Positions 37,260 through 58,592 of a stretch of 64,000 nt of DNA are shown here, one piece after another (position 1 is the first letter of the stretch; every line of letters starts with the position of its first letter). Below the pieces are notes generated by a model that worked only from the letters and a program-made list of their open reading frames with translations, did no database searches and was not told the origin of the DNA. The position numbers were made by a program, and so were the translations under genes. Source of the stretch: Adineta vaga (taxonomy: Eukaryota > Animalia > Rotifera); assembly GCA_021613535.1 (NCBI GenBank), contig CP075494.1, positions 14,880,001 to 14,944,000 of the forward strand, read 5' to 3'.

Positions 37260-39990
37260 GATATATGGTTACTGTAATTTATTTTTCAGGAAAATAGGAA
37301 TTTAATTCTTGATGTTAAAGATTTTTTATTTTAAAACTAAACGAAAAAGAGAAAAATAAATTGATTCTAAAGACATTATATAATCATTTGAAAAATAGAT
37401 AATAGATGCGTCTGGACATAAACAGATGTTAAATGCCATTTGAACCGAAAGACTGAACGAACGAAGTAACGAGCGAACATTCGTCTTCTCTCTTCTCTTT
37501 TCGCTCGTTTTCTCTTTTTTCTATTCTCATTTGTTTGTTTATTCTTTTCCTTTCATTCGTTCTCTGATAGTCTCATCATCATCATAACCATTTTCGTCAT
37601 CTGCCAATGCAACTTAAGATATTGTTAAAAAGTAAAAATTGCGTAAACTTGTCGGATTTTTATGTCCAACTTAACCAATTACAATGCGTATAGATGATGT
37701 CTTAGAAAAAAAATCTGACAAAAATCAATAGAAAAATCAACAGGGAAATATTCGATAGAGGACGTTACAAGTCGATCGTGTAATATCGTGAAGGTGTGGA
37801 TGAGAGTGAAAATTTGATTCTCAATCAATTCTTCATTGATATAGAATCTGATTCAAACAAACAAAGAGGAGTGAAAGAAGTTTCTAATCTAAATCTTCTA
37901 TGACTAAAACTTAGAAAATTTATTGGATTTCTACAATAAATGCGAAGCACAGTGTATTATTCATACAAATTGTATCATTATCAAACTTCACTTTGACTTT
38001 ATTCGGAGTTAGATTATGTTTTACAATAACATTAAATGCACAGAATACTTTTGATAAATCCCGTAAATTCAGATGAAACAAAACAGTACAATTTCAAATT
38101 GAAACTAATCAATAACACCAGTAAGTGGAAATGGTTTTGATGAACTATTTTCAAAAAACTTGTTCTAAAAAAATATATATCTAATAAATAAGATAGACTT
38201 CTTTCGTTACCATTTTGTCTCTTGATTTTTCCATGTTCTCATTTCTCACACAAATCACAATCAAAAATAAAATATCAAAAGTTTTATCAATATTTTCATT
38301 TTCATTCTTTTCTTTTGTTTTAATTCAAATAATAAACTTAACGAAATGATTATGTCTATTTCATTAGAATGAAATTTCGTTTACATGAATGATGTTATGC
38401 GAATTTGCCAATAGAGATCATATGTTTTTCCTCTTTTCATTCGTAGAATGATTCGAAGTTTAACAGATTGAATTAATCTTATGCTATTGTAATAATAACA
38501 AATCGAATCGGAAACCTGCCCAAACGTTTCAATTAACTTTCATTCAGAGTATTGTGAATAGAATAATGGTGATAATGATTTCTTCATTTGTAGTTTTTGT
38601 GTTTTATGCATAATATCTATATTCCATAGAAATACAGAAAATATAGTGATAAACTCAAAACTCGAACGAGATAAGCCATTTGTAAGACGATCATATCTTA
38701 TTTTCTCATCATTCAATGTCGTTATTTTCATCAAATATGTCAATGAGAACATAACATTCACTACCAAACATCTTCTGATCACTAACTCAACACATACATG
38801 AGATTCTCAAGCGAATAATTGCGATCAAATCAAGAATTGTTTTCTAAAGTACTACTTTTTGATGCATAATCATCTTTGTAAATAAATAAGTACATAGAAT
38901 CAATTCTACTTATCAATTTTATTCACAATGCAAGAGCTAATGTAGATGTGCATGTTAATAGATTTGATTTCATAGCACACTTCAGACTGTTAAGAGCATT
39001 TTTGTTATTGCCAAAACTAAATCCTACTTCACGTTCATTGCTGTTGATATCAAAACGTATTGGCTGATGTTCTTTATCAACTGTTGCATTTCATCTGTTA
39101 CAGGTTTGATGTTGACGATAAATAATCATTTTGTCTGTACAGATGAATATATCAGTTGAACATGTAATAAACATAGTTCTCGATCAAAGAACATAACCGA
39201 AAGAGCAGAAACGAAAATATAAAATTTATGTTTTTCTTTCGACATGTTTTGTCTCAGATAATCGATGAAAATATGTAGCTGTGATATATTATATTATGTA
39301 GCACTTTCAAAAGGATAGATAATTTTGCAGTCAGTTAGACAACTTTTATCGAAAAAAGTGTATTAATCATCATTACTGTCAAAATATTACCGATAAACTA
39401 CAAATACAAAGTTAAAACATTACGTTTTTGTCTAGATCATATATAGATAATTTTTCTTCTTATTCTTCGAAGACATTAATTGCCACCATTGACTCAAGTA
39501 CACGATGAATATCCAGTTACCCGATCAAACACATATTACATATGAACATCAAAAATTAAACGAACATATTTTACCAGATATTCCGTTTATCAAAAATTGA
39601 AACCAATTTTTTTAACAAAGCGCATATACACTAGAGATAAAACATTTGGGATGAAACTTGTGCTGCTATTCATTTGATTTCGATAAATTTCAACGAAACC
39701 TAGATGATATTATTTCTCTGCTGATAAGTCATTGTTGAAGGTGGAATCACCATTAATCATACAACCATCTGTGATACTATAAAGCTCATACCATTGTATT
39801 TCTTTTTATGTTGATTAGACTTCACACATAAAACTCTTTATTGAAATGATATCTTATGAGCAAAATTAGAAAAACGTTAAAATATGAGCTATCACTCAAT
39901 TGATTCAGACATGCAATATCGAACATTCATTAGCTAACTTTTCATAAGCGTTCAGAAGAAAAATGACAATGAATGTGTTTCTTTATCCTA

Positions 39991-40307
39991 CGGTTAACCT
40001 GAATTTGATCGAAAAGTAAAAATATCGAACAGAAAAAGGGTGGGTGTGGGTGTTAGTGACACTCACCTGTTGATATGTTACCCACACCCACACCGTCATC
40101 CACACACACACTGTCACCAACACCAACACAGTCACTCACATGCTCACCGTCACCCACACCCACCCGAAAAAAAACAAAAAATGATAGAAGCCTGGAATTC
40201 CTTTTTCTTCTATTCTTCCATTTTCGATTTTATTGTCTGTTCGTCATTTTTATTTTCGACATTTTTACCGTCGATATTTTTCAATTCGACATTATTCACT
40301 AGAATCT
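39991..40307. mobile_element. Degenerate MITE-like element with inverted arrays of TCGA-containing short repeats
   Basis: Left end gatcgaaaagtaaaaatatcgaacag. The reverse complement of the right end reads gtcgaattgaaaaatatcgacggtaaaaatgtcgaaaataaaaatgacgaacag. No clean TSD seen. Confidence 0.45.
40038..40166. repeat. GGGTGT/CCCACA-rich inverted repeat with internal ~18-bp minisatellite (telomere-like)
   Basis: gggtgggtgtgggtg...gtgac at the left and gtcacccacacccaccc at the right, with internal units approximating CACCCACACCGTCACCCA. Confidence 0.7.
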
Positions 40308-43300
40308 GTTGAAGTTGCAACGGTCGAACCACCGTATCCGAACGAAATTACCGTGTTCACTCGATGGGCATCGACCAAGTGCTTTCCGATTTCATTGGAA
40401 CAGAGATTTAGTTCGGTGAGTGTCTAGATAAGAGAGTGCTGTCAAGGGAGAAGACAGTAGAAGAGTGAATGGAGATTACCGTGTTCACTCGAAGGGCATC
40501 AGCCAAGTGCTGTGCTCCTTCATCTCCGATTCCATTCTGATCGAGATTTAGTTCGGTGAGTGTCTAAAGAAGAGATTGCTGTCAAGGGAGAAGACAATAG
40601 AAGAGTGAATGGAGATTACCGTGTTCACTCGAAGGGCATCAGCCAAGTGCTGTGCTCCTTCATCTCCGATTCCATTCTGATCGAGATTTAGTTCGGTGAG
40701 TGTCTAAAGAAGAGATTGCTGTCAAGGGAGAAGACAGTAGAAGAGTGAATGGAGATTACCGTGTTCACTCGAAGGGCATCAGCCAAGTGCTGTGCTCCTT
40801 GATCTCCGATTTCATTACACTCGAGATCTAGTCTGGTGAGTGTCTAGATAAGAGATTGCTGTCAAGGGAGAAGACAGTAGAAGAGTGAATGGGGATTACC
40901 GTGTTCACTCGAAGCACATCAGCCAAGTGCTGTGCTCCTTCATCTCCGATTCCATTCTGATGGAGATTTAGTTCGGTGAGTGTCTAAAGAAGAGATTGCT
41001 GTCAAGGGAGAAGACAGTAGAAGAGTGAATGGAGATTACCGTGTTCACTCGAAGGGCATCAGCCAAGTGCTGTGCTCCTTCATCTCCGATTCCATTCTGA
41101 TGGAGATCTAGTCTGGTGAGTGTCTAAAGAAGAGATTGCTGTCAAGGGAGAAGACAGTAGAAGAGTGAATGGAGATTACCGTGTTCACTCGAAGGGCATC
41201 AGCCAAGTGCTGTACTCCTTGATATCGGATTGAATTGTGACTGAGGTATAGTGTGGTGAGTGTCTAGATAAGAGAGTGCTGTCAAAGAAGAAGACAGTAG
41301 AAGAGTGAATGGAGATTACCGTGTTCACTCGAAGGGCATCAGCCAAGTGCTGTGCTCCTTCATCTCCGATTCGATTCTGATGGAGATTTAGTTGGGTGAG
41401 TGTCTAGATAAGAGATTGCTGTCAAAGAAGAAGACAGTAGAAGAGTGAATGGAGATTACCGTGTTCACTCGAAGGGCATCAGCCAAGTGCTGTGCGCCTT
41501 GATCTCCGATTTCATTCCAAGCGAGATTTAGTTGGGTGAGTGTCTAAAGAAGAGATTGGTGTCAAAGAAGAAGACAGTAGAAGAGTGAATGGATATTACC
41601 GTGCTCACTCGAAGGGCATCAGCCAAGTGCTGTGCTCCGTCATCTCCGATTCGATTCTGATGGAGATCTAGTTTGGTGAGTGTCTAAAGAAGAGATTGCT
41701 GTCAAGGGAGAAGACAGTAGAAGAGTGAATGGGGATTACCGTGTTCACTCGAAGGGCATCAGCCAAGTGCTGTGCTCCTTGATCTCCGATTCGATTATGA
41801 TGGAGATTTAGTTCGGTGAGTGTCTAAAGAAGAGATTACTGTCAAGGGAGAAGACAGTAGAAGAATGAATGGAGATTACCGTGTTCACTCGAAGGGCAGC
41901 AGCCAAGTGCTGTACTCCTTGATATCGGATTGAATTGTGACTGAGGTATAGTGTGGTGAGTGTCTAGATAAGAGAGTGCTGTCAAAGAAGAAGACAGTAG
42001 AAGAGTGAATGGATATTACCGTGTTCACTCGAAGGACATCAGCTAAGAAGGACCCGTGTGAACAGTAAAGAACTTTAGGTATCTTTGTACTTCTGTATCT
42101 TATACTTTAGTGGGGAGTTAATTACCTCGAACTGATTGGTCTTCTTACTAATATGTGAAAAAGTTGTGAGTAGTTTTTGGTTGGGTTGAAATTAGTGGCG
42201 TAACCATATGTCGTGCGGTGAGTGGGCGTCGCGCTACCAGTTTCTCGAAGATCATATAAGTTGATGCATATATTTTATATATTTTTATTGAGAACAAATG
42301 ATTTCTTATATGATATCGTTTCATTTTATATTTTATTAGGAAATAAATCGTTGATGAAATCAAATCTATCAACTACGATTGGTCAAGTACATTCTCCTCT
42401 CTTTTAGCGGATAGGAGTTTTTCGTAAGTTGAAAAGTTCGAGGTGGAGCGTCGAGTAATTTTGCGAAACTTTTGAAAAACTTGAGAAAATACTGACGTAT
42501 TTTTAGCAGTTCTTCAGCTTTTCTGAACATTTCCTCGGGTGTTCAAGACGTATTCAATGTTGATCGAAAATTTCTAAAAGCGTTTTCAATTTCTTGAATT
42601 TTTTTCGAAATTTCGGAAACAAATCGACTTTTTCTCAAAAAGCTGAAGAATATTTTTGAAATTTTTAATAACTTTTGCTAATATGGTGAGCGAAAAATGA
42701 AATTCGTCAGGATTCGGAAACTTCGTGGCGTCAACAACACAGTGATTAATGGATAACTTATGTTTTAGAAAATATTTGGTTTAAAGCTTATGCATATATT
42801 GTTCTAAAAGTTCGCTTTTCAAGAACTACCGGAGAGTGGGCGAAAACGTTCGGTGAGTGGACGGCGCCCGCTCATGCCCTACCCTGGTTACACCACTAGT
42901 TCAAATAATATTTTCTCTGATTTTGTTTGAAGTGTTGCATTCAAAACTATCGTCTATTGAAAAATTACTTTAGTCTCTTTGTGAGAATGAGTGGAAGAAA
43001 AAGAGAAAAGATTTTGTGAAGAAATGGTGTTGTTCGTTGGCATTCATTGACTGATGTAGTATTTCAGCAAGTAGTGAGAGCTTTGTTCCAGCTGCATCTC
43101 AGGAGGGTTGATGTGAGTGGGTAAGAAAGGGATTGAGTTTATCGGTATTCTCTCGGTTTTGGTACCTATCCTGTTCTTGCGTTTATTCCGCCGGGATAGC
43201 CGGAGACGTGTCGTAGTATACAGATGTGATATATATATTTAAAGAGATCTTTAAAAATTTTGCATAAGTGTTTTGTCTAGTATGTTCTGTGAATTTCGAG

Positions 43301-44814
43301 AAAAAAAGATGAAGTCTATGAAAACCTTCGTTCTTGTATCTTTGTCTTCTTTATACTTGGAATTCTCGTAAAAGTCAGTGAGATTTGTTTGAGCACCATC
43401 AAAGGCAGAATCAGCAATCGACAGAATCAGTGTAGTTTCAGATTCGTCCAAATAAGAACCATCAGGTAAGATATGCTCTAGTATTCTTAACAAGTGATGG
43501 TTTTCTTCGTTCGTATAAATGATTACTGGCACACTTCCATATCGATCTCAATATTTCCTTTACTCTTTATGATGTTTTCTTCGGTCGTTTCTTTCTTTTA
43601 TACTGTAATGTAAACAAGTTTTTGTTAATGGGGATAATTGAATAGACACCTATTCTGTGAACGGCGGTGATATATTCGCGATACTCCTTTATGTTAAACA
43701 ATGTCTAGAAGCTGGTTCTCTTGGGTACATTGTAATAAAAAAAAATCTTCTATCACCGGCTCATCTCTTGTTTCTCTTTATTTGTTTCTACATGTCGCTA
43801 GACATCAAGTCAATCAACGTGTTAAAAAGAAGAAATATACTCATTACTTAGATTGTAGTTTTAATGATCAATTTAAAATCCATACAGAAAATAGTATACT
43901 TTAACGAAACCATATTATACTTATAACTTCTTCAGAAAGCAATAAGGGAATAAATCAACTTAGAATATTTCACAACTAAATTCTACAAGATAGTAGTACC
44001 GTGATTCCTAAAGTCTTTCGTCACTTCGAGAGATTTTCTCGTATAGTTGTGCATGTTGGTTTGTGATTTGATTACATTGGGAGTTTAGTTCAGTAACTGT
44101 CAGTCTATCTGCGTATGGAGAGAGGAAATCTATGCTATATTTACATTATCTATTTATCTTTTCTTATATAGAAATAGGTCAATAGCGAAAATAATTTGGA
44201 ATTACTGGTTAGTGGTTGTTAGTAGATGATGACGGTGTAGCGGAGGAAATCAACTATAAGATATACAGGGAGAATGTAATGCGTTTACGTACTTTTACAA
44301 TGTTAGAGGAATAGACTTAGACTGCCTATGTATGGACTTGACATTATTCAGTATTATTGATGGACATCTTAAGTCATCCTCTACAACTGCTGTGATAAAA
44401 ACAAGATTTAGTCCATCGATATAAACAGTGAAGTATCATACGAGAAGGTATTGGTATTTATCAAAAAGTCCCTTCGAACGGTAAACAAATATCAGAATGA
44501 TCATGATCTAGAACATAAAACTACCTTTATCATCTTTATCTTGCCCTTATAAGACATGTGCAAAGAACATTCAATACCGTGATTGAGTGATTATTTAACT
44601 TGTCTTTCAGTTAATTCACTATAGATGATATCATATGTCTTCTACAAAAGTATCGATTTACCTGATATCGATGATAGGTATTCAGAATTTGATTGAGACG
44701 ATGGCAAACGTTTTGTACCGAGCAAATGAGACTGAAGTCATTCAGATTGTCAAGAATTCTATAAACGAATTCGACAGGTAATGTGACGAAAGTTGGCATA
44801 GTTTTTGTATTCAT
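40292..44814 (-). CDS. Putative F-box + RI-type LRR protein (F-box exon 44662-44814 spliced to the LRR exon array); integrity uncertain
   Basis: F-box TFVTLPVEFVYRILDNLNDFSLICSVQNVCHRLNQIL ends in a phase-0 donor (CAG|gtaaat) compatible with the phase-0 LRR exons. The last exon can read through to TAA at 40292. The intervening ~2.7 kb contains a MITE and decayed sequence. Confidence 0.65.
40352..42045 (-). repeat. Tandem array of 140-bp units, each an 84-nt ribonuclease-inhibitor/NLRC3-type LRR exon plus a 56-nt GT-AG intron (11 full exons, one shortened 72-nt last exon, one 5'-truncated exon)
   Basis: Exon starts at 41963, 41823 ... 40423, exactly 140 apart. Consensus TLTELNLxQNxIGDEGAQHLADALRVNT. 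Intron gtaatctccattcactcttctactgtcttctcccttgacagcaatctcttctttag. Confidence 0.97.
42193..42898. mobile_element. Non-autonomous hAT-like DNA transposon (MITE), ~706 bp
   Basis: 14-bp TIRs TAGTGGCGTAACCA / TGGTTACACCACTA (1 mismatch). Flanking 8-mers GTTGAAAT / GTTCAAAT (7/8 TSD). Subterminal GGTGAGTGG(G/A)CG motifs at both ends. No transposase ORF. Confidence 0.82.
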
Positions 44815-56844: not shown

Positions 56845-58592
56845 TTAATCAAGATCATTAGCTGAAGATGCACCAGCACCACCACCCATGCCACCTAGAA
56901 GAATACATTATGATGGAAATTCATGATGAAGCAAATAATAGAAAACTAACCTGGAAAACCTGGGAAACCACCTCCCATTGGTCCACCTGCACCACCAAAT
57001 TTACCGGCAAGTTTTTCCATAACTTTACGTACCTTTGGATTACTTTGATGAGCAGCTATTTTCGATGGATCAGCACTGACTTCCTGAAAATTATAGTATT
57101 TAGAGTACGCTGCCTATTTAAAATCATAGACATTGATGCCGAAGTTCTTACCGAAAAAGCTTTTTGTACATCAGGATCTTGTAATGCTTCCATTATTTCT
57201 GGATCATTTAGCATAGCGCCCAATCCTCCGAGATCGGCACCACCAGCACCACCACCCATATCACTCATACCTCCCATATCACCCATACCTCCCATGCCGC
57301 CCATACCTCCCATACCACCCATACCACCCATACCACCCATGCCGCCCATGCCTCCCATACCACCTAAATGGACGTAAAGATAGGACACATCAAATGGCAA
57401 ACTATCATACGGTTATACCTGGAAATCCTGGAAATTGATGTCCACCTGCAGCACGAGCTTGTTGTTCGCGTGCTCGACGTTCATTTTCTTCCTGTTGTGC
57501 TTTGGCATAAGCTTCTTGAGCTTTACGAATACGTTCACGTTTAGCTTCAATTTCTTTTGTTTCTCGACGGCGTTCATATTTACGTTTATGTTCAGTAACT
57601 TTTTTCGCCTATATAAAATTCAAACATACAATGATAAACGAAACACACTATAAAATAAATGAATTTACATTTGCTTCAACTTCTTTACACCATGTTTGTA
57701 CATCTTCGTCAAAATCCGATATTTGAGCTTTACAAAAATCTTTATAAGCTGCTTCCCAATCACCCAACATACTAAACGAATAAATCAATTATGGTGCAAA
57801 AATAATCTTATGAATTTCATACCGATGAGCTTTTCCTCTCCATTTCAAAGCTTGTTGAGAATTTTCATTGATTTCTAAAGCTCGATTACAATCACGTACA
57901 GCTGCATTTGGTTTTTGAAGTTTGATGTAACATTGAGCACGTTTAGCGTAGAGAATAGCCGATTGTGGGTTATTTTCAATTGCTTGTGTAAACAATGAAA
58001 TAGCATCTTCAAATGCACCTTCAGAAAGTTTTCCTTGAGCTTCAGATCGTTTCACATCGGCTTGTTCTAACATAGCATCTGTAACCTATTTAAATTAACA
58101 TTTCGTTATTAAATAAAACACTTAAGTTTCACACTCAATCATACTTCAGCATTAGCGTCTCCCATCGATTGTGGTGGATCATTATCTCCAGCAATAACAC
58201 CGGTTGTATCCAATTCTATTTGAAGAAGAAAATCAAGAAAATTATAAAGAATGATCAAGAAAAATGTCTTACCTAAATCACTTTCTGGGTCACTTTCTAC
58301 TTTTGGTGGTTCTGCTTCTTGACTAGTTGAAGATTTATGTTCTTCTTCATCGACATTTATCTTTGATGATTGTGAACTTTCTTGTTTTTTATTAGCAGGA
58401 AGTGTTGCACCTAATCTAAATGAAATATATATATTTTTTATAATGATTTTATTCAAATCGTTCATTTTACTTTGAAAGCCATTGTCGAAAAAACTCCAAT
58501 TCAGGTGCATGAAGTAATTCAGGTTGAGCTTCGCATAAAGAAACAAATTGTTTAAGAAGACGAACGTGTTCGCTTGGAATATTATTCGACAT
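56845..58592 (-). CDS. ST13: Hsc70-interacting protein Hip/ST13 (dimerisation domain, TPR, GGM repeats, STI1)
   Basis: LLKQFVSLCEAQPELLHAPEL...LGATLP, ELDTTGVI, TPR AILYAKRAQCYIKLQKPNAAVRDC, GGM repeats, LNDPEIMEALQDPDV, C-terminal NDLD*. Confidence 0.95.
57240..57365 (-). repeat. Coding 9-bp tandem repeat encoding (GGM)n of ST13
   Basis: Repeated ggtggtatg/ggaggtatg/ggcggcatg units. Confidence 0.9.

What the first reader, a model, noticed from the sequence alone, without database searches (positions are those of the whole stretch)
40352..42045. Cassette-like LRR exon array: invariant introns and scaffold, hypervariable ligand-face codons
Seen: 12 phase-0 exons at an exact 140-bp period. The 56-nt introns and the helix half (GAQHLADALRVNT) differ at only a few positions, while the x positions of LxxLxLxxNxI vary non-synonymously, often by multi-base codon changes. 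In 5'-3' order: TLYLSHNS, ELNLHHNR, KLDLHQNR, QLNLAWNE, QLNLHQNR, TLYLSHNS, RLDLHQNG, ELNLHQNG, RLDLECNE, ELNLDQNG, ELNLDQNG, ELNLCSNE. No stops, and all GT-AG sites are intact. The array is visibly more GC-rich than its flanks. Known: these positions line the concave ligand-binding face of RI-type LRRs, and diversified LRR cassettes underlie lamprey VLRs and the exon-shuffled LRR genes of Ectocarpus. Inference: a diversity-generating recognition system in which constant intron/scaffold DNA provides recombination homology around short variable segments. This is the best candidate for an undescribed system here.
Basis: partly seen in the sequence, partly recalled or inferred. Interest (0 to 1): 0.9.

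Follow-up and report, generated by a model that had tools for sequence, protein, structure and literature searches.

The report
Rotifer F-box gene with diversifying LRR exons
This is an expressed gene of the asexual rotifer Adineta vaga: one of more than a hundred F-box proteins whose binding surface is built from near-identical one-repeat exons that recombine and evolve fast at the contact residues. It looks like a germline "arms-race" receptor family, not a lamprey-style somatic diversity generator.

Summary
On the minus strand, 12 phase-0 LRR exons (11 of 84 nt, plus a terminal exon with a 12-nt deletion) alternate with 56-nt GT-AG introns at an exact 140-bp period. The array is GC-rich and has no stops.

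"Invariant introns" is overstated. The introns vary at 11 of 56 columns (K 0.07), more than the helix half of the exons (dS 0.02).

RNA contigs show the 56-nt introns removed. They also show an F-box exon 2.7 kb upstream (44814-44662) spliced onto the array.

The genome is Adineta vaga. It holds at least 149 related F-box exons and dozens of sister arrays of 5-24 units, enriched towards chromosome ends. Adineta steineri and Rotaria share the one-exon-per-repeat layout.

Concave-face codons (3, 4, 6, 8, 9, 11, also 14-15) have omega about 1.9, against 0.37 for the scaffold (Fisher 5e-29). Their dN exceeds intron divergence in all 21 arrays. Units are mosaics (PHI p=0.002).

No variable segment of this array recurs in the 20 other arrays examined. 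All 23 contigs of the best RNA-like run match the genome at 99% or better. There is therefore no support for somatic, cassette-based assembly.

Best reading: a germline family of SCF substrate receptors, diversified by unequal recombination, gene conversion and positive selection. The scan had already flagged sister arrays elsewhere in this genome.

The parts
44662..44814 (-). Exon 1: start codon and F-box (51 aa), ending ...HRYQ, with a GTAAAT donor at 44661
   Evidence: ORF and sequence. Pfam F-box-like E=3.6e-5, 23.9 bits against a cut-off of 24.3. The homolog P0156 passes the PF00646 cut-off. An RNA contig joint ends exactly at 44662. At least 149 homologous exons occur in the genome.
41964..44661 (-). 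Intron 1 (2,698 nt) between the F-box exon and the first LRR exon
   Evidence: The RNA-like run X13 has zero depth from 42071 to 44575, and a CT..AC joint links 44662 to a TLYLSHNS exon. Most of the intron is homologous to intron 1 of the paralogs L022 and L041, so it is ancestral to this subfamily.
42190..42907 (.). Dispersed repeat fragment of about 700 bp inside intron 1
   Evidence: This part of intron 1 matches scattered loci on C1, C2, C3, C5 and C6 at 70-87% identity. The coordinates are approximate.
42020..42047 (-). Dead, 5'-truncated LRR unit (only ...LADVLRVNT remains), followed by a normal 56-nt unit intron
   Evidence: nhmmer matches unit positions 113-140 (E=8.8e-5 with the exon model). 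It is the only significant dead unit in intron 1.
40480..41963 (-). Eleven 84-nt phase-0 LRR exons (first bases 41963, 41823, 41683, 41543, 41403, 41263, 41123, 40983, 40843, 40703, 40563) separated by ten 56-nt GT-AG introns
   Evidence: RNA contigs show 56-nt skips at 41543/41600 and 40423/40480, and spliced loose ends at 40564, 40844, 41124 and 41824.
40295..40423 (-). Coding part of the terminal exon: a twelfth LRR with a 12-nt in-frame deletion, reading on for 19 more codons to a stop at 40294-40292
   Evidence: RNA-like contigs of X13 and X20 are continuous across 40352 (39969-40424 and 40199-40424).
39969..40294 (-). Stop codon (40294-40292) and 3' UTR (at least to 39969), containing an 18-bp CA-rich tandem repeat at 40080-40163
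   Evidence: RNA contig 39969-40424. TRF.

Best explanation
The array is the substrate-binding domain of an expressed, germline-encoded F-box/LRR gene of the bdelloid rotifer Adineta vaga. The exons sum to about 402 aa: a 51-aa F-box exon, eleven 28-aa LRR exons and a 43-aa terminal exon.

Shown here:
- The gene is spliced as predicted.
- It belongs to a bdelloid-wide family of more than 100 genes. In that family every RI-type LRR is a separate 84-nt phase-0 exon flanked by 49-59-nt introns.
- Arrays change by tandem unit duplication or loss and by recombination or gene conversion between units.
- The concave-face codons evolve under diversifying selection, while the helix scaffold is under purifying selection.
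- The introns behave neutrally. They look constant only because units within an array share very recent ancestry.

Inferred:
- The F-box docks on Skp1/Cul1, and the hypervariable concave LRR surface selects proteins for ubiquitylation.
- The family is an arms-race repertoire against fast-changing targets such as pathogen, viral, transposon or other selfish-element proteins. This is the role proposed for the expanded F-box families of nematodes and plants.
- Diversity arises in the germline over generations, not by programmed somatic assembly.
For: Anatomy.

Expression and splicing. 56-nt introns are removed, the F-box donor at 44662 is joined to a TLYLSHNS exon, and the terminal exon is continuous.

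Organism: one search returns an A. vaga protein on a contig whose length equals that of C4 (15,224,634). One search confirms six chromosomes.

Family:
- At least 277 unit matches, 85 first-look candidates.
- 21 arrays of 5-24 units dissected.
- An F-box exon lies upstream of 19 of the 20 sister arrays, with a weak partial match at the twentieth.
- At least 149 F-box exon matches genome-wide, with 62 of 96 in the distal 20% of chromosomes (p=1.7e-6).
- Annotated F-box+LRR_6 homologs exist in A. steineri, A. ricciae and Rotaria, with the same exon-per-repeat layout.

Fold: RI, NOD2 and NLRP matches. In the AF2 model the strand covers repeat positions 4-6 and the helix positions 13-26.

Selection:
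- Window: concave dN 0.54, intron K 0.07, scaffold dS 0.023.
- Family: 322 N against 47 S changes at concave codons (omega 1.9; p=8e-6 against neutrality), and 208 N against 202 S in the scaffold (omega 0.37). Fisher p=5e-29.
- Per-codon omega exceeds 1 at positions 3, 4, 6, 8, 9, 11, 14 and 15 (and, on few counts, 21).

Recombination:
- PHI p=0.0024, with 79 of 231 informative site pairs incompatible.
- Unit 5 (exon first base 41403) carries the intron type of the TLYLSHNS units but a different exon type.
- Units 1 and 6 (41963 and 41263) are near-identical although not adjacent.
- The recent paralogs L034 and L037 differ in unit order and number.

Skp1 docking: score 0.38 against 0.01 for the best of 3 controls. 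Runs agree in at least 96% of contacts and partner pLDDT is at least 67. The tool's verdict is weak support.
Against: - No functional data exist. Target class, ubiquitin-ligase activity and any immune role are inferred by analogy.
- The window's own F-box exon scores just below Pfam's gathering threshold (23.9 against 24.3 bits).
- The Skp1 prediction is only weak support, and could reflect the model's memory of solved Skp1/F-box complexes.
- Within this one array the scaffold dN/dS is about 0.9, on very few changes. Purifying selection on the scaffold is therefore shown for the family, not for this gene alone.
- Pairwise and parsimony counts ignore recombination and non-independence of units.
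- Logan contigs cannot show rare somatic variants, unit order, or exon skipping.
- X13 and X20 are not on record as RNA. That they hold RNA is inferred from their spliced contigs and the zero depth over intron 1.
Confidence: 0.75

Rival explanations
1. A programmed somatic diversity-generating system, like lamprey VLRs. Constant intron and scaffold DNA would guide copy-choice or gene conversion that rewrites the variable segments in somatic cells.
For: The architecture is permissive: symmetric phase-0 exons, near-identical flanks and mosaic units. Bdelloids repair many DNA breaks and show frequent recombination between homologs (PMC8494291).
Against: - The germline gene is complete and in frame.
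- All 23 contigs of run X13 laid on the locus match the genome at 99% or better, and X13 shows no differing letters inside the array.
- There are no donor cassettes. None of this array's variable segments was found in 20 other arrays, and only one dead partial unit lies nearby.
- The LRRs are of the cytosolic RI type, fused to an F-box. They are not secreted VLR-type LRRs with cysteine caps.
- Caveat: contigs drop rare variants, so low-level somatic change is not excluded.
Confidence: 0.04
2. Isoform diversity by combinatorial exon skipping. All internal exons are 84 nt and phase 0 with near-identical splice sites, so any subset could be spliced in frame, giving many receptors from one gene.
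For: The exons are symmetric and the splice sites identical. RNA contig joints skip 476 and 616 nt, and the F-box exon is joined to 41263 rather than 41963. Alternative splicing of exon-per-LRR ROCO genes is reported in brown algae (PMC11378527).
Against: Each of these long joints rests on a 20-29-nt side that is identical between units (checked against the unit alignment). They are equally explained by ordinary neighbour-to-neighbour splicing. Contigs cannot resolve exon order.
Confidence: 0.15
3. Neutral concerted evolution without positive selection. The x positions are simply unconstrained, and once diverged they block gene-conversion tracts. Only the introns and scaffold are then homogenised, which makes the x positions look hypervariable.
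For: Synonymous divergence is also higher in the concave codons than in the scaffold (window 0.155 against 0.023). Conversion among units is evident.
Against: Within the same concave codons, which share one conversion history, non-synonymous changes still exceed the neutral expectation. The family count is 322 N to 47 S, omega 1.9, p=8e-6, and the window gives omega of about 3.5-3.9. First and second codon positions vary more than third positions at codons 6, 8, 9 and 11. NG86 site counting is conservative for omega above 1 if transitions are favoured (my reasoning).
Confidence: 0.1
4. A decaying or redundant family member with no function of its own.
For: The first unit is truncated, the last has a 12-nt deletion, and the array lacks the C-terminal cap exon of the main clade. 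The closest F-box paralog, L041, has lost nearly all its LRRs. Scaffold dN/dS in this array is about 0.9.
Against: All 12 exons are open, all splice sites are intact, and the mRNA is present and correctly spliced in two RNA-like runs.
Confidence: 0.1

Closest known systems
Ectocarpus LRR-ROCO and NB-ARC-TPR genes with exon-per-repeat shuffling (Zambounis et al. 2012, PMC3341825; PMC11378527)
   Same: There is one repeat per exon, and the exons are frame-preserving and of identical length. Units are duplicated and shuffled within and between loci. Dead repeat units occur in introns. Positive selection acts on concave-face residues. The gene family is large and dynamic (one search compared).
   Different: The Ectocarpus exons are 72 nt (24 aa) and attached to ROC-COR GTPase signalling domains in a brown alga. 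Here the exons are 84 nt (28 aa, RI type), the introns are tiny (49-59 nt), the effector domain is an F-box, and the organism is an asexual animal.
Expanded F-box (and MATH-BTB) ubiquitin-ligase adaptor families of Caenorhabditis and plants under positive selection (e.g. PMC8120010, PMC8665587, PMC3719486)
   Same: There are hundreds of lineage-specific F-box genes, enriched towards chromosome ends or arms. Positive selection acts on the substrate-binding domain while the F-box is conserved. An arms-race role in pathogen or selfish-element recognition has been proposed (for the papers; for this genome).
   Different: Nematode families mostly use FTH/FBA2 substrate domains, not tandem exon-per-repeat LRR arrays. 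Array-level unit turnover and mosaicism are features of the rotifer family.
Canonical FBXL proteins (Skp2, FBXL2 and others)
   Same: An N-terminal F-box is followed by an LRR solenoid that binds substrates.
   Different: By my own knowledge, FBXL repeats are the roughly 26-aa cysteine-containing type, the genes are few, conserved and single-copy, and there is no hypervariable face. Here the nearest solved LRRs are ribonuclease inhibitor, NOD2 and NLRP.
Lamprey and hagfish variable lymphocyte receptors
   Same: LRR modules carry diversity concentrated on the concave beta-sheet, with conserved flanks between modules.
   Different: By my own knowledge, VLR germline genes are incomplete and are assembled somatically from flanking cassettes by a cytidine-deaminase-linked copy-choice process, and the proteins are secreted or GPI-anchored. 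Here the germline gene is complete, the transcripts match the germline, no cassettes were found, and the protein is a cytosolic F-box type.

Membership tests
F-box proteins (SCF substrate receptors) | An F-box motif of about 45 aa, recognisable by profile | tested here: met
   The window exon gives PF12937 E=3.6e-5, 23.9 bits against a cut-off of 24.3, which is borderline. The family homolog P0156 scores 23.9 bits on PF00646, above the 20.5 cut-off. UniRef names the homologs F-box domain-containing proteins. The AF2 model of P0012 shows N-terminal helices at residues 14-21, 26-30 and 32-46.
F-box proteins (SCF substrate receptors) | Binds Skp1 | tested here: inconclusive
   The F-box exon was folded with an A. 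vaga Skp1 exon fragment (L043:1339-1611). The score was 0.38 against 0.01 for the best of 3 controls, runs agreed in at least 96% of contacts, and partner pLDDT was at least 67. The tool's verdict is weak support, and such a pass may come from the model's memory of solved complexes. The Skp1 fragment lacks the BTB half and the last helix because exons could not be joined.
F-box proteins (SCF substrate receptors) | A C-terminal protein-interaction domain | tested here: met
   Twelve LRR exons are spliced downstream of the F-box exon.
RI-type (RNI-like, Pfam LRR_6) leucine-rich repeats | A 28-29-aa repeat, LxxLxLxxN/CxL strand followed by an alpha-helix, forming a horseshoe | tested here: met
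   The 28-aa unit carries the motif. Homologs score LRR_6 at E=3e-15 to 4e-29. phmmer against the PDB finds ribonuclease inhibitor 1dfj at 1e-27 and NOD2 at 4e-25. AF2 shows alternating strands and helices, and Foldseek finds NLRP1, RI and NOD2. A single window exon is too short for Pfam.
Lamprey VLR-type somatic assembly | An incomplete germline gene completed from flanking donor cassettes | tested here: not met
   The germline gene is complete and in frame and is spliced as encoded. Only one dead partial unit lies nearby. No variable segments are shared with 20 other arrays.
Lamprey VLR-type somatic assembly | Expressed sequences differ from the germline | tested here: not met
   All 23 contigs of RNA-like run X13 match the genome at 99% or better, and X13 shows no differing letters in the array. 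Contigs would miss rare variants.
Lamprey VLR-type somatic assembly | An AID/APOBEC-family deaminase partner | not tested
   No search was run for it.
Ectocarpus-type exon-shuffled LRR receptor genes | One LRR per exon, with equal-length frame-preserving exons, shuffled or duplicated units, and positive selection on the concave face | tested here: met
   compared with PMC3341825.
Ectocarpus-type exon-shuffled LRR receptor genes | A ROC-COR GTPase (ROCO) effector domain | tested here: not met
   The only other domain is an F-box.
Arms-race F-box expansions (Caenorhabditis and plant type) | A large lineage-specific expansion with positive selection confined to the substrate-binding domain | tested here: met
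   At least 149 F-box exons. Homologs seen are bdelloid only for the F-box plus this LRR architecture. Omega is 1.9 at concave codons and 0.37 in the scaffold.

The most novel reading that the evidence does not exclude
In an animal that has abandoned meiotic sex, exon-per-repeat F-box/LRR arrays could be a heritable recognition repertoire that is reshuffled by the animal's own break repair. Repair after desiccation, and ameiotic recombination, would drive unequal exchange and gene conversion between near-identical 140-bp units. This would create new concave-face combinations within clonal lineages, possibly multiplied by in-frame exon skipping. It would be a recombination-based substitute for sexual shuffling of resistance alleles.
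Probability: 0.1. Interest if true: 0.85.

Novelty: new variant of a known kind. Interest (0 to 1): 0.5.

Why it matters
Bdelloid rotifers are the textbook "ancient asexuals". How they keep pace with coevolving pathogens without sex is an open question.

A family of more than 100 ubiquitin-ligase adaptors, spread across bdelloid genera, has a binding face under strong diversifying selection and a gene architecture that makes repeat turnover easy. That makes it a concrete, testable candidate for an intracellular recognition repertoire.

The full-text library I could search describes it only as a generic "LRR expansion" (PMC3846280). The one infection transcriptome paper I checked did not analyse metazoan genes of this kind (PMC11258130).

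It is also an animal parallel to the exon-shuffled receptors of brown algae, and it combines that architecture with the F-box arms-race pattern known from nematodes and plants.

Tried and rejected
- **Spliced protein model.** I used exon-by-exon references and database homologs instead.
- **F-box phmmer search.** phmmer of the F-box exon against 1.84 billion representatives gave 551 hits, but the best 150 listed were 53-287 aa. Many look like single-exon calls, and eight checked clusters came from bdelloids or unnamed assemblies.
- **Word search with P0156.** It did not return the window's own protein.
- **Pfam.** A single 28-aa exon and the intronic ORF at 43254-43547 gave nothing.
- **Dead LRR exons in intron 1.** Only one partial unit was found. 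A second candidate at about 44049-44099 has E=0.43.
- **Shared cassettes between arrays.** None was found for this array.
- **Special conservation of the intron.** Rejected.
- **Exon skipping.** The joints of 476, 616 and 3,398 nt are ambiguous because the shorter side of each is identical between units.
- **A five-unit higher-order repeat.** Not supported, because only units 1 and 6 pair up.
- **Assembly collapse.** Contig depth cannot test it.
- **Skp1 docking.** Weak support only: 0.38 against a best control of 0.01.
- **Literature.** Searches for bdelloid, Adineta or rotifer with F-box or LRR found no description of this family.
Full report
**1. What is in the sequence**

Tandem Repeats Finder reports one strong array at 40403-42047: period 140, 11.8 copies, 91% matches and no indels. 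GC is 44-46% there, against about 30% for the rest of the window.

On the minus strand every unit is a 56-nt intron (GTAAT...YAG) followed by an 84-nt exon. The exon encodes a 28-aa repeat of the form TLTxLxLxxNxIGDxGAQHLADALRVNT.

There is no stop, and every AG/GT pair is intact.

- The last exon (first base 40423) has a 12-nt in-frame deletion. It is the terminal exon, reading on to a stop at 40294-40292.
- A 5'-truncated dead unit sits just upstream at 42047-42020.

**2. The gene and its expression**

An ORF at 44814-44662 on the same strand is an F-box. It scores E=3.6e-5 on Pfam F-box-like, 23.9 bits against a cut-off of 24.3. It ends ...HRYQ, followed by a GTAAAT donor.

Two runs of the same organism, X13 and X20, are not on record as RNA, but their contigs are spliced.
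- 56-nt CT..AC skips occur at 41543/41600 and 40423/40480.
- Loose ends show the previous exon's last bases at 40424, 40564, 40844, 41124 and 41824.
- A joint links 44662 to the start of a TLYLSHNS exon.
- X13 has no depth over 42071-44575, which is intron 1.
- Contigs run unbroken from 40424 to 39969, covering the terminal exon and the 3' UTR.

The TLYLSHNS acceptor is ambiguous. It could be 41963 or 41263, because those two exons are identical over the 29 nt that define the joint. The first exon (41963) is the simpler reading.

The 476- and 616-nt "skips" are ambiguous for the same reason, so they are not evidence for exon skipping.

The exon lengths add up to about 402 aa: 51 aa of F-box, eleven 28-aa LRRs and a 43-aa terminal exon.

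**3. Organism and family**

The genome has 100.8 Mb in six contigs. A homolog is annotated as an Adineta vaga protein on a contig of 15,224,634 bp, which is exactly the length of contig C4 here. This fits the six-chromosome assembly of PMC8494291.

The 280-bp two-unit query finds at least 277 matches at 71-78% identity. The first look gave 85 candidates, of which 40 were scored.

I dissected 20 sister loci.
- Arrays have 5-24 units and a period of about 137-143 bp.
- 19 of the 20 are preceded by a clearly homologous F-box exon ending in the same ...RYQ/GT donor; L027 gives only a weak partial match.
- The same positions are variable in all of them.

The F-box exon alone has at least 149 matches in the genome. 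Of 96 hits at E of 1e-10 or better, 62 lie in the distal 20% of a chromosome, against 38 expected (p=1.7e-6).

Annotated homologs occur in A. steineri, A. ricciae and several Rotaria species. They carry only names such as "F-box domain-containing protein" or "unnamed protein product". They score strongly on LRR_6, and one passes the F-box cut-off.

Their genes have the same layout.
- Rotaria magnacalcarata: 84-nt exons with 57-59-nt introns.
- A. steineri: 84-nt exons with 49-56-nt introns.

The exon-per-repeat architecture is therefore old and bdelloid-wide.

The long first intron is shared with the closest paralogs (L022, L041). It carries a fragment of a dispersed repeat, about 700 bp long.

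**4. Fold**

The nearest solved sequences are ribonuclease-inhibitor-like proteins: RI itself (1dfj, E=1e-27), NOD2 and NLRPs.

An AF2 model of the homolog P0012 has mean pLDDT 78 and pTM 0.76.
- The N-terminus is helical (residues 14-21, 26-30 and 32-46).
- It is followed by alternating strands at repeat positions 4-6 and helices at positions 13-26.

Foldseek returns NLRP1-LRR, RI and NOD2. The variable positions 4, 6, 8, 9 and 11 therefore lie in and just after the beta-strand, on the concave face. Positions 14-15 lie at its rim.

**5. Is the variation more than neutral?**

Within this array:

| Partition | dN | dS or K |
|---|---|---|
| Concave codons 3, 4, 6, 8, 9, 11 | 0.54 | dS 0.155 |
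| Scaffold | 0.021 | dS 0.023 |
| Introns | n/a | K 0.07 |

A parsimony lower bound gives 16 non-synonymous changes on 14.5 sites, against 11 changes on 56 intron sites (p=1.3e-5).

Across 21 arrays:

| Partition | Non-synonymous | Synonymous | Omega |
|---|---|---|---|
| Concave codons | 322 | 47 | 1.9 (p=8e-6 against neutrality) |
| Scaffold | 208 | 202 | 0.37 |

- Fisher's test on the two partitions gives p=5e-29.
- Concave dN exceeds intron K in all 21 arrays.
- Per-codon omega is above 1 at positions 3, 4, 6, 8, 9, 11, 14 and 15 (and, on few counts, 21). It is 0.86 at 26, about 1 at 25, and below 0.7 at the rest.
- At codons 6, 8, 9 and 11 the first and second codon positions vary more than the third.

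The omega above 1 inside the concave codons matters. Synonymous and non-synonymous sites of the same codons share one conversion history, so this result cannot be produced by differential homogenisation alone.

**6. Are the introns special?**

No. Within arrays they are similar because the units are young or homogenised.

Between arrays intron divergence (K 0.34-0.69) is about the same as scaffold synonymous divergence (0.34-0.82). In this array the introns are more variable than the helix half of the exons.

**7. Recombination**

Among 22 informative sites, 79 of 231 pairs are incompatible. The pairwise homoplasy statistic is lower than in 99.8% of site permutations (p=0.0024).

Concrete mosaics, counting units 1-12 from the 5' end:
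- Unit 5 (exon 41403) has the intron haplotype of the TLYLSHNS units (1-2 differences). Its variable segment is 12 differences away from theirs and 2-3 from other units.
- Units 1 and 6 (41963 and 41263) are near-identical (2 of 140) although not adjacent.
- Units 10 and 11 (40703 and 40563) differ at one base.

The recent paralogs L034 and L037 are only partly collinear in their units.

**8. Is it a dedicated diversity generator?**

I find no support for that.
- The germline gene is complete.
- All 23 contigs of X13 match the genome at 99% or better, and X13 shows no alternative letters in the array.
- The 281 units examined carry 206 distinct 36-nt variable segments. Only 9 are shared between arrays, all between recent paralogs, and none of this array's segments is shared.
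- Only one dead partial unit lies nearby.

Limits: contigs hide rare variants, and they cannot show unit order or exon combinations.

**9. Mechanism proposed**

Shown: an expressed F-box/RI-LRR gene from a large family, evolving by unit duplication or loss, inter-unit recombination or conversion, and diversifying selection on the ligand face.

Inferred: the F-box recruits Skp1/Cul1, and the LRR face selects targets for ubiquitylation.

A fold of the F-box exon with an A. vaga Skp1 exon fragment scored 0.38, against 0.01 for the best of 3 controls. Runs agreed in at least 96% of contacts and partner pLDDT was at least 67. The tool's own verdict is weak support. A pass for a family with solved complexes may also be memory.

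The target class is proposed by analogy with nematode and plant F-box expansions (papers found). Candidates are pathogen, viral, transposon or other selfish-element proteins.

**10. Comparison and novelty**

The system works like two known things at once.
- The exon-shuffled LRR receptors of Ectocarpus (PMC3341825).
- The arms-race F-box adaptor families of Caenorhabditis and plants.

It is not a member of the VLR kind, because two defining features were tested and not met.

In the library I could search, bdelloid LRR expansions are mentioned only generically (PMC3846280). The infection transcriptome paper does not mention F-box or LRR genes (PMC11258130). I therefore rate this a new variant of a known kind.

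Other first-stage notes of this scan had already flagged this stretch and sister arrays elsewhere in the same genome.

Noticed in passing
L041 (G000:C6:2359000-2368500): The paralog with the most similar F-box exon (92% identity) retains only one recognisable LRR unit plus a degenerate one. Whole arrays can evidently be lost while the F-box exon stays open.
   Followed up: partly
G000: C3:4379158, C6:12323741, C6:12327684, C5:6796621, C2:13031241, C3:17168109, C3:18713746, C5:5381867: Eight Skp1-domain (PF01466) matches occur in the genome, two of them 4 kb apart on C6. This may be a modest Skp1 expansion accompanying the F-box expansion, as with the C. elegans skr genes. Ohnologs could account for part of it.
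   Followed up: no
proteins P0160, P0182, P0205, P0221, P0241, P0253: In Rotaria species the same RI-type LRR arrays are annotated in fusion with other domains, including arginine ADP-ribosyltransferase (PF01129) and B-box. The LRR module may be shared among several effector families, or some gene models may be mis-joined.
   Followed up: no
window 40080-40163: An 18-bp CA-rich tandem repeat (ACCCACACC-like, 4.7 copies) lies inside the transcribed 3' UTR of the gene.
   Followed up: no
window about 42190-42907: A fragment of about 700 bp in intron 1 matches scattered loci on five other chromosomes at 70-87% identity. It is probably a piece of a transposable element.
   Followed up: partly
window 43167-44165: A low-depth contig of a 2013 run differs from the window at 18 positions and a 2-bp deletion in 997 bp (about 1.8%). 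This probably represents the other haplotype of intron 1.
   Followed up: no
window 57251-57364: A 9-bp and 45-bp tandem repeat (ACCACCCAT, 12.7 copies) lies in a locally GC-richer kilobase. It was not examined.
   Followed up: no
L042 (G000:C1:905000-914500): A family member whose 14 LRR units and introns are much more diverged from one another. It may be an old array that has escaped homogenisation, and would be a useful contrast for dating unit turnover.
   Followed up: partly
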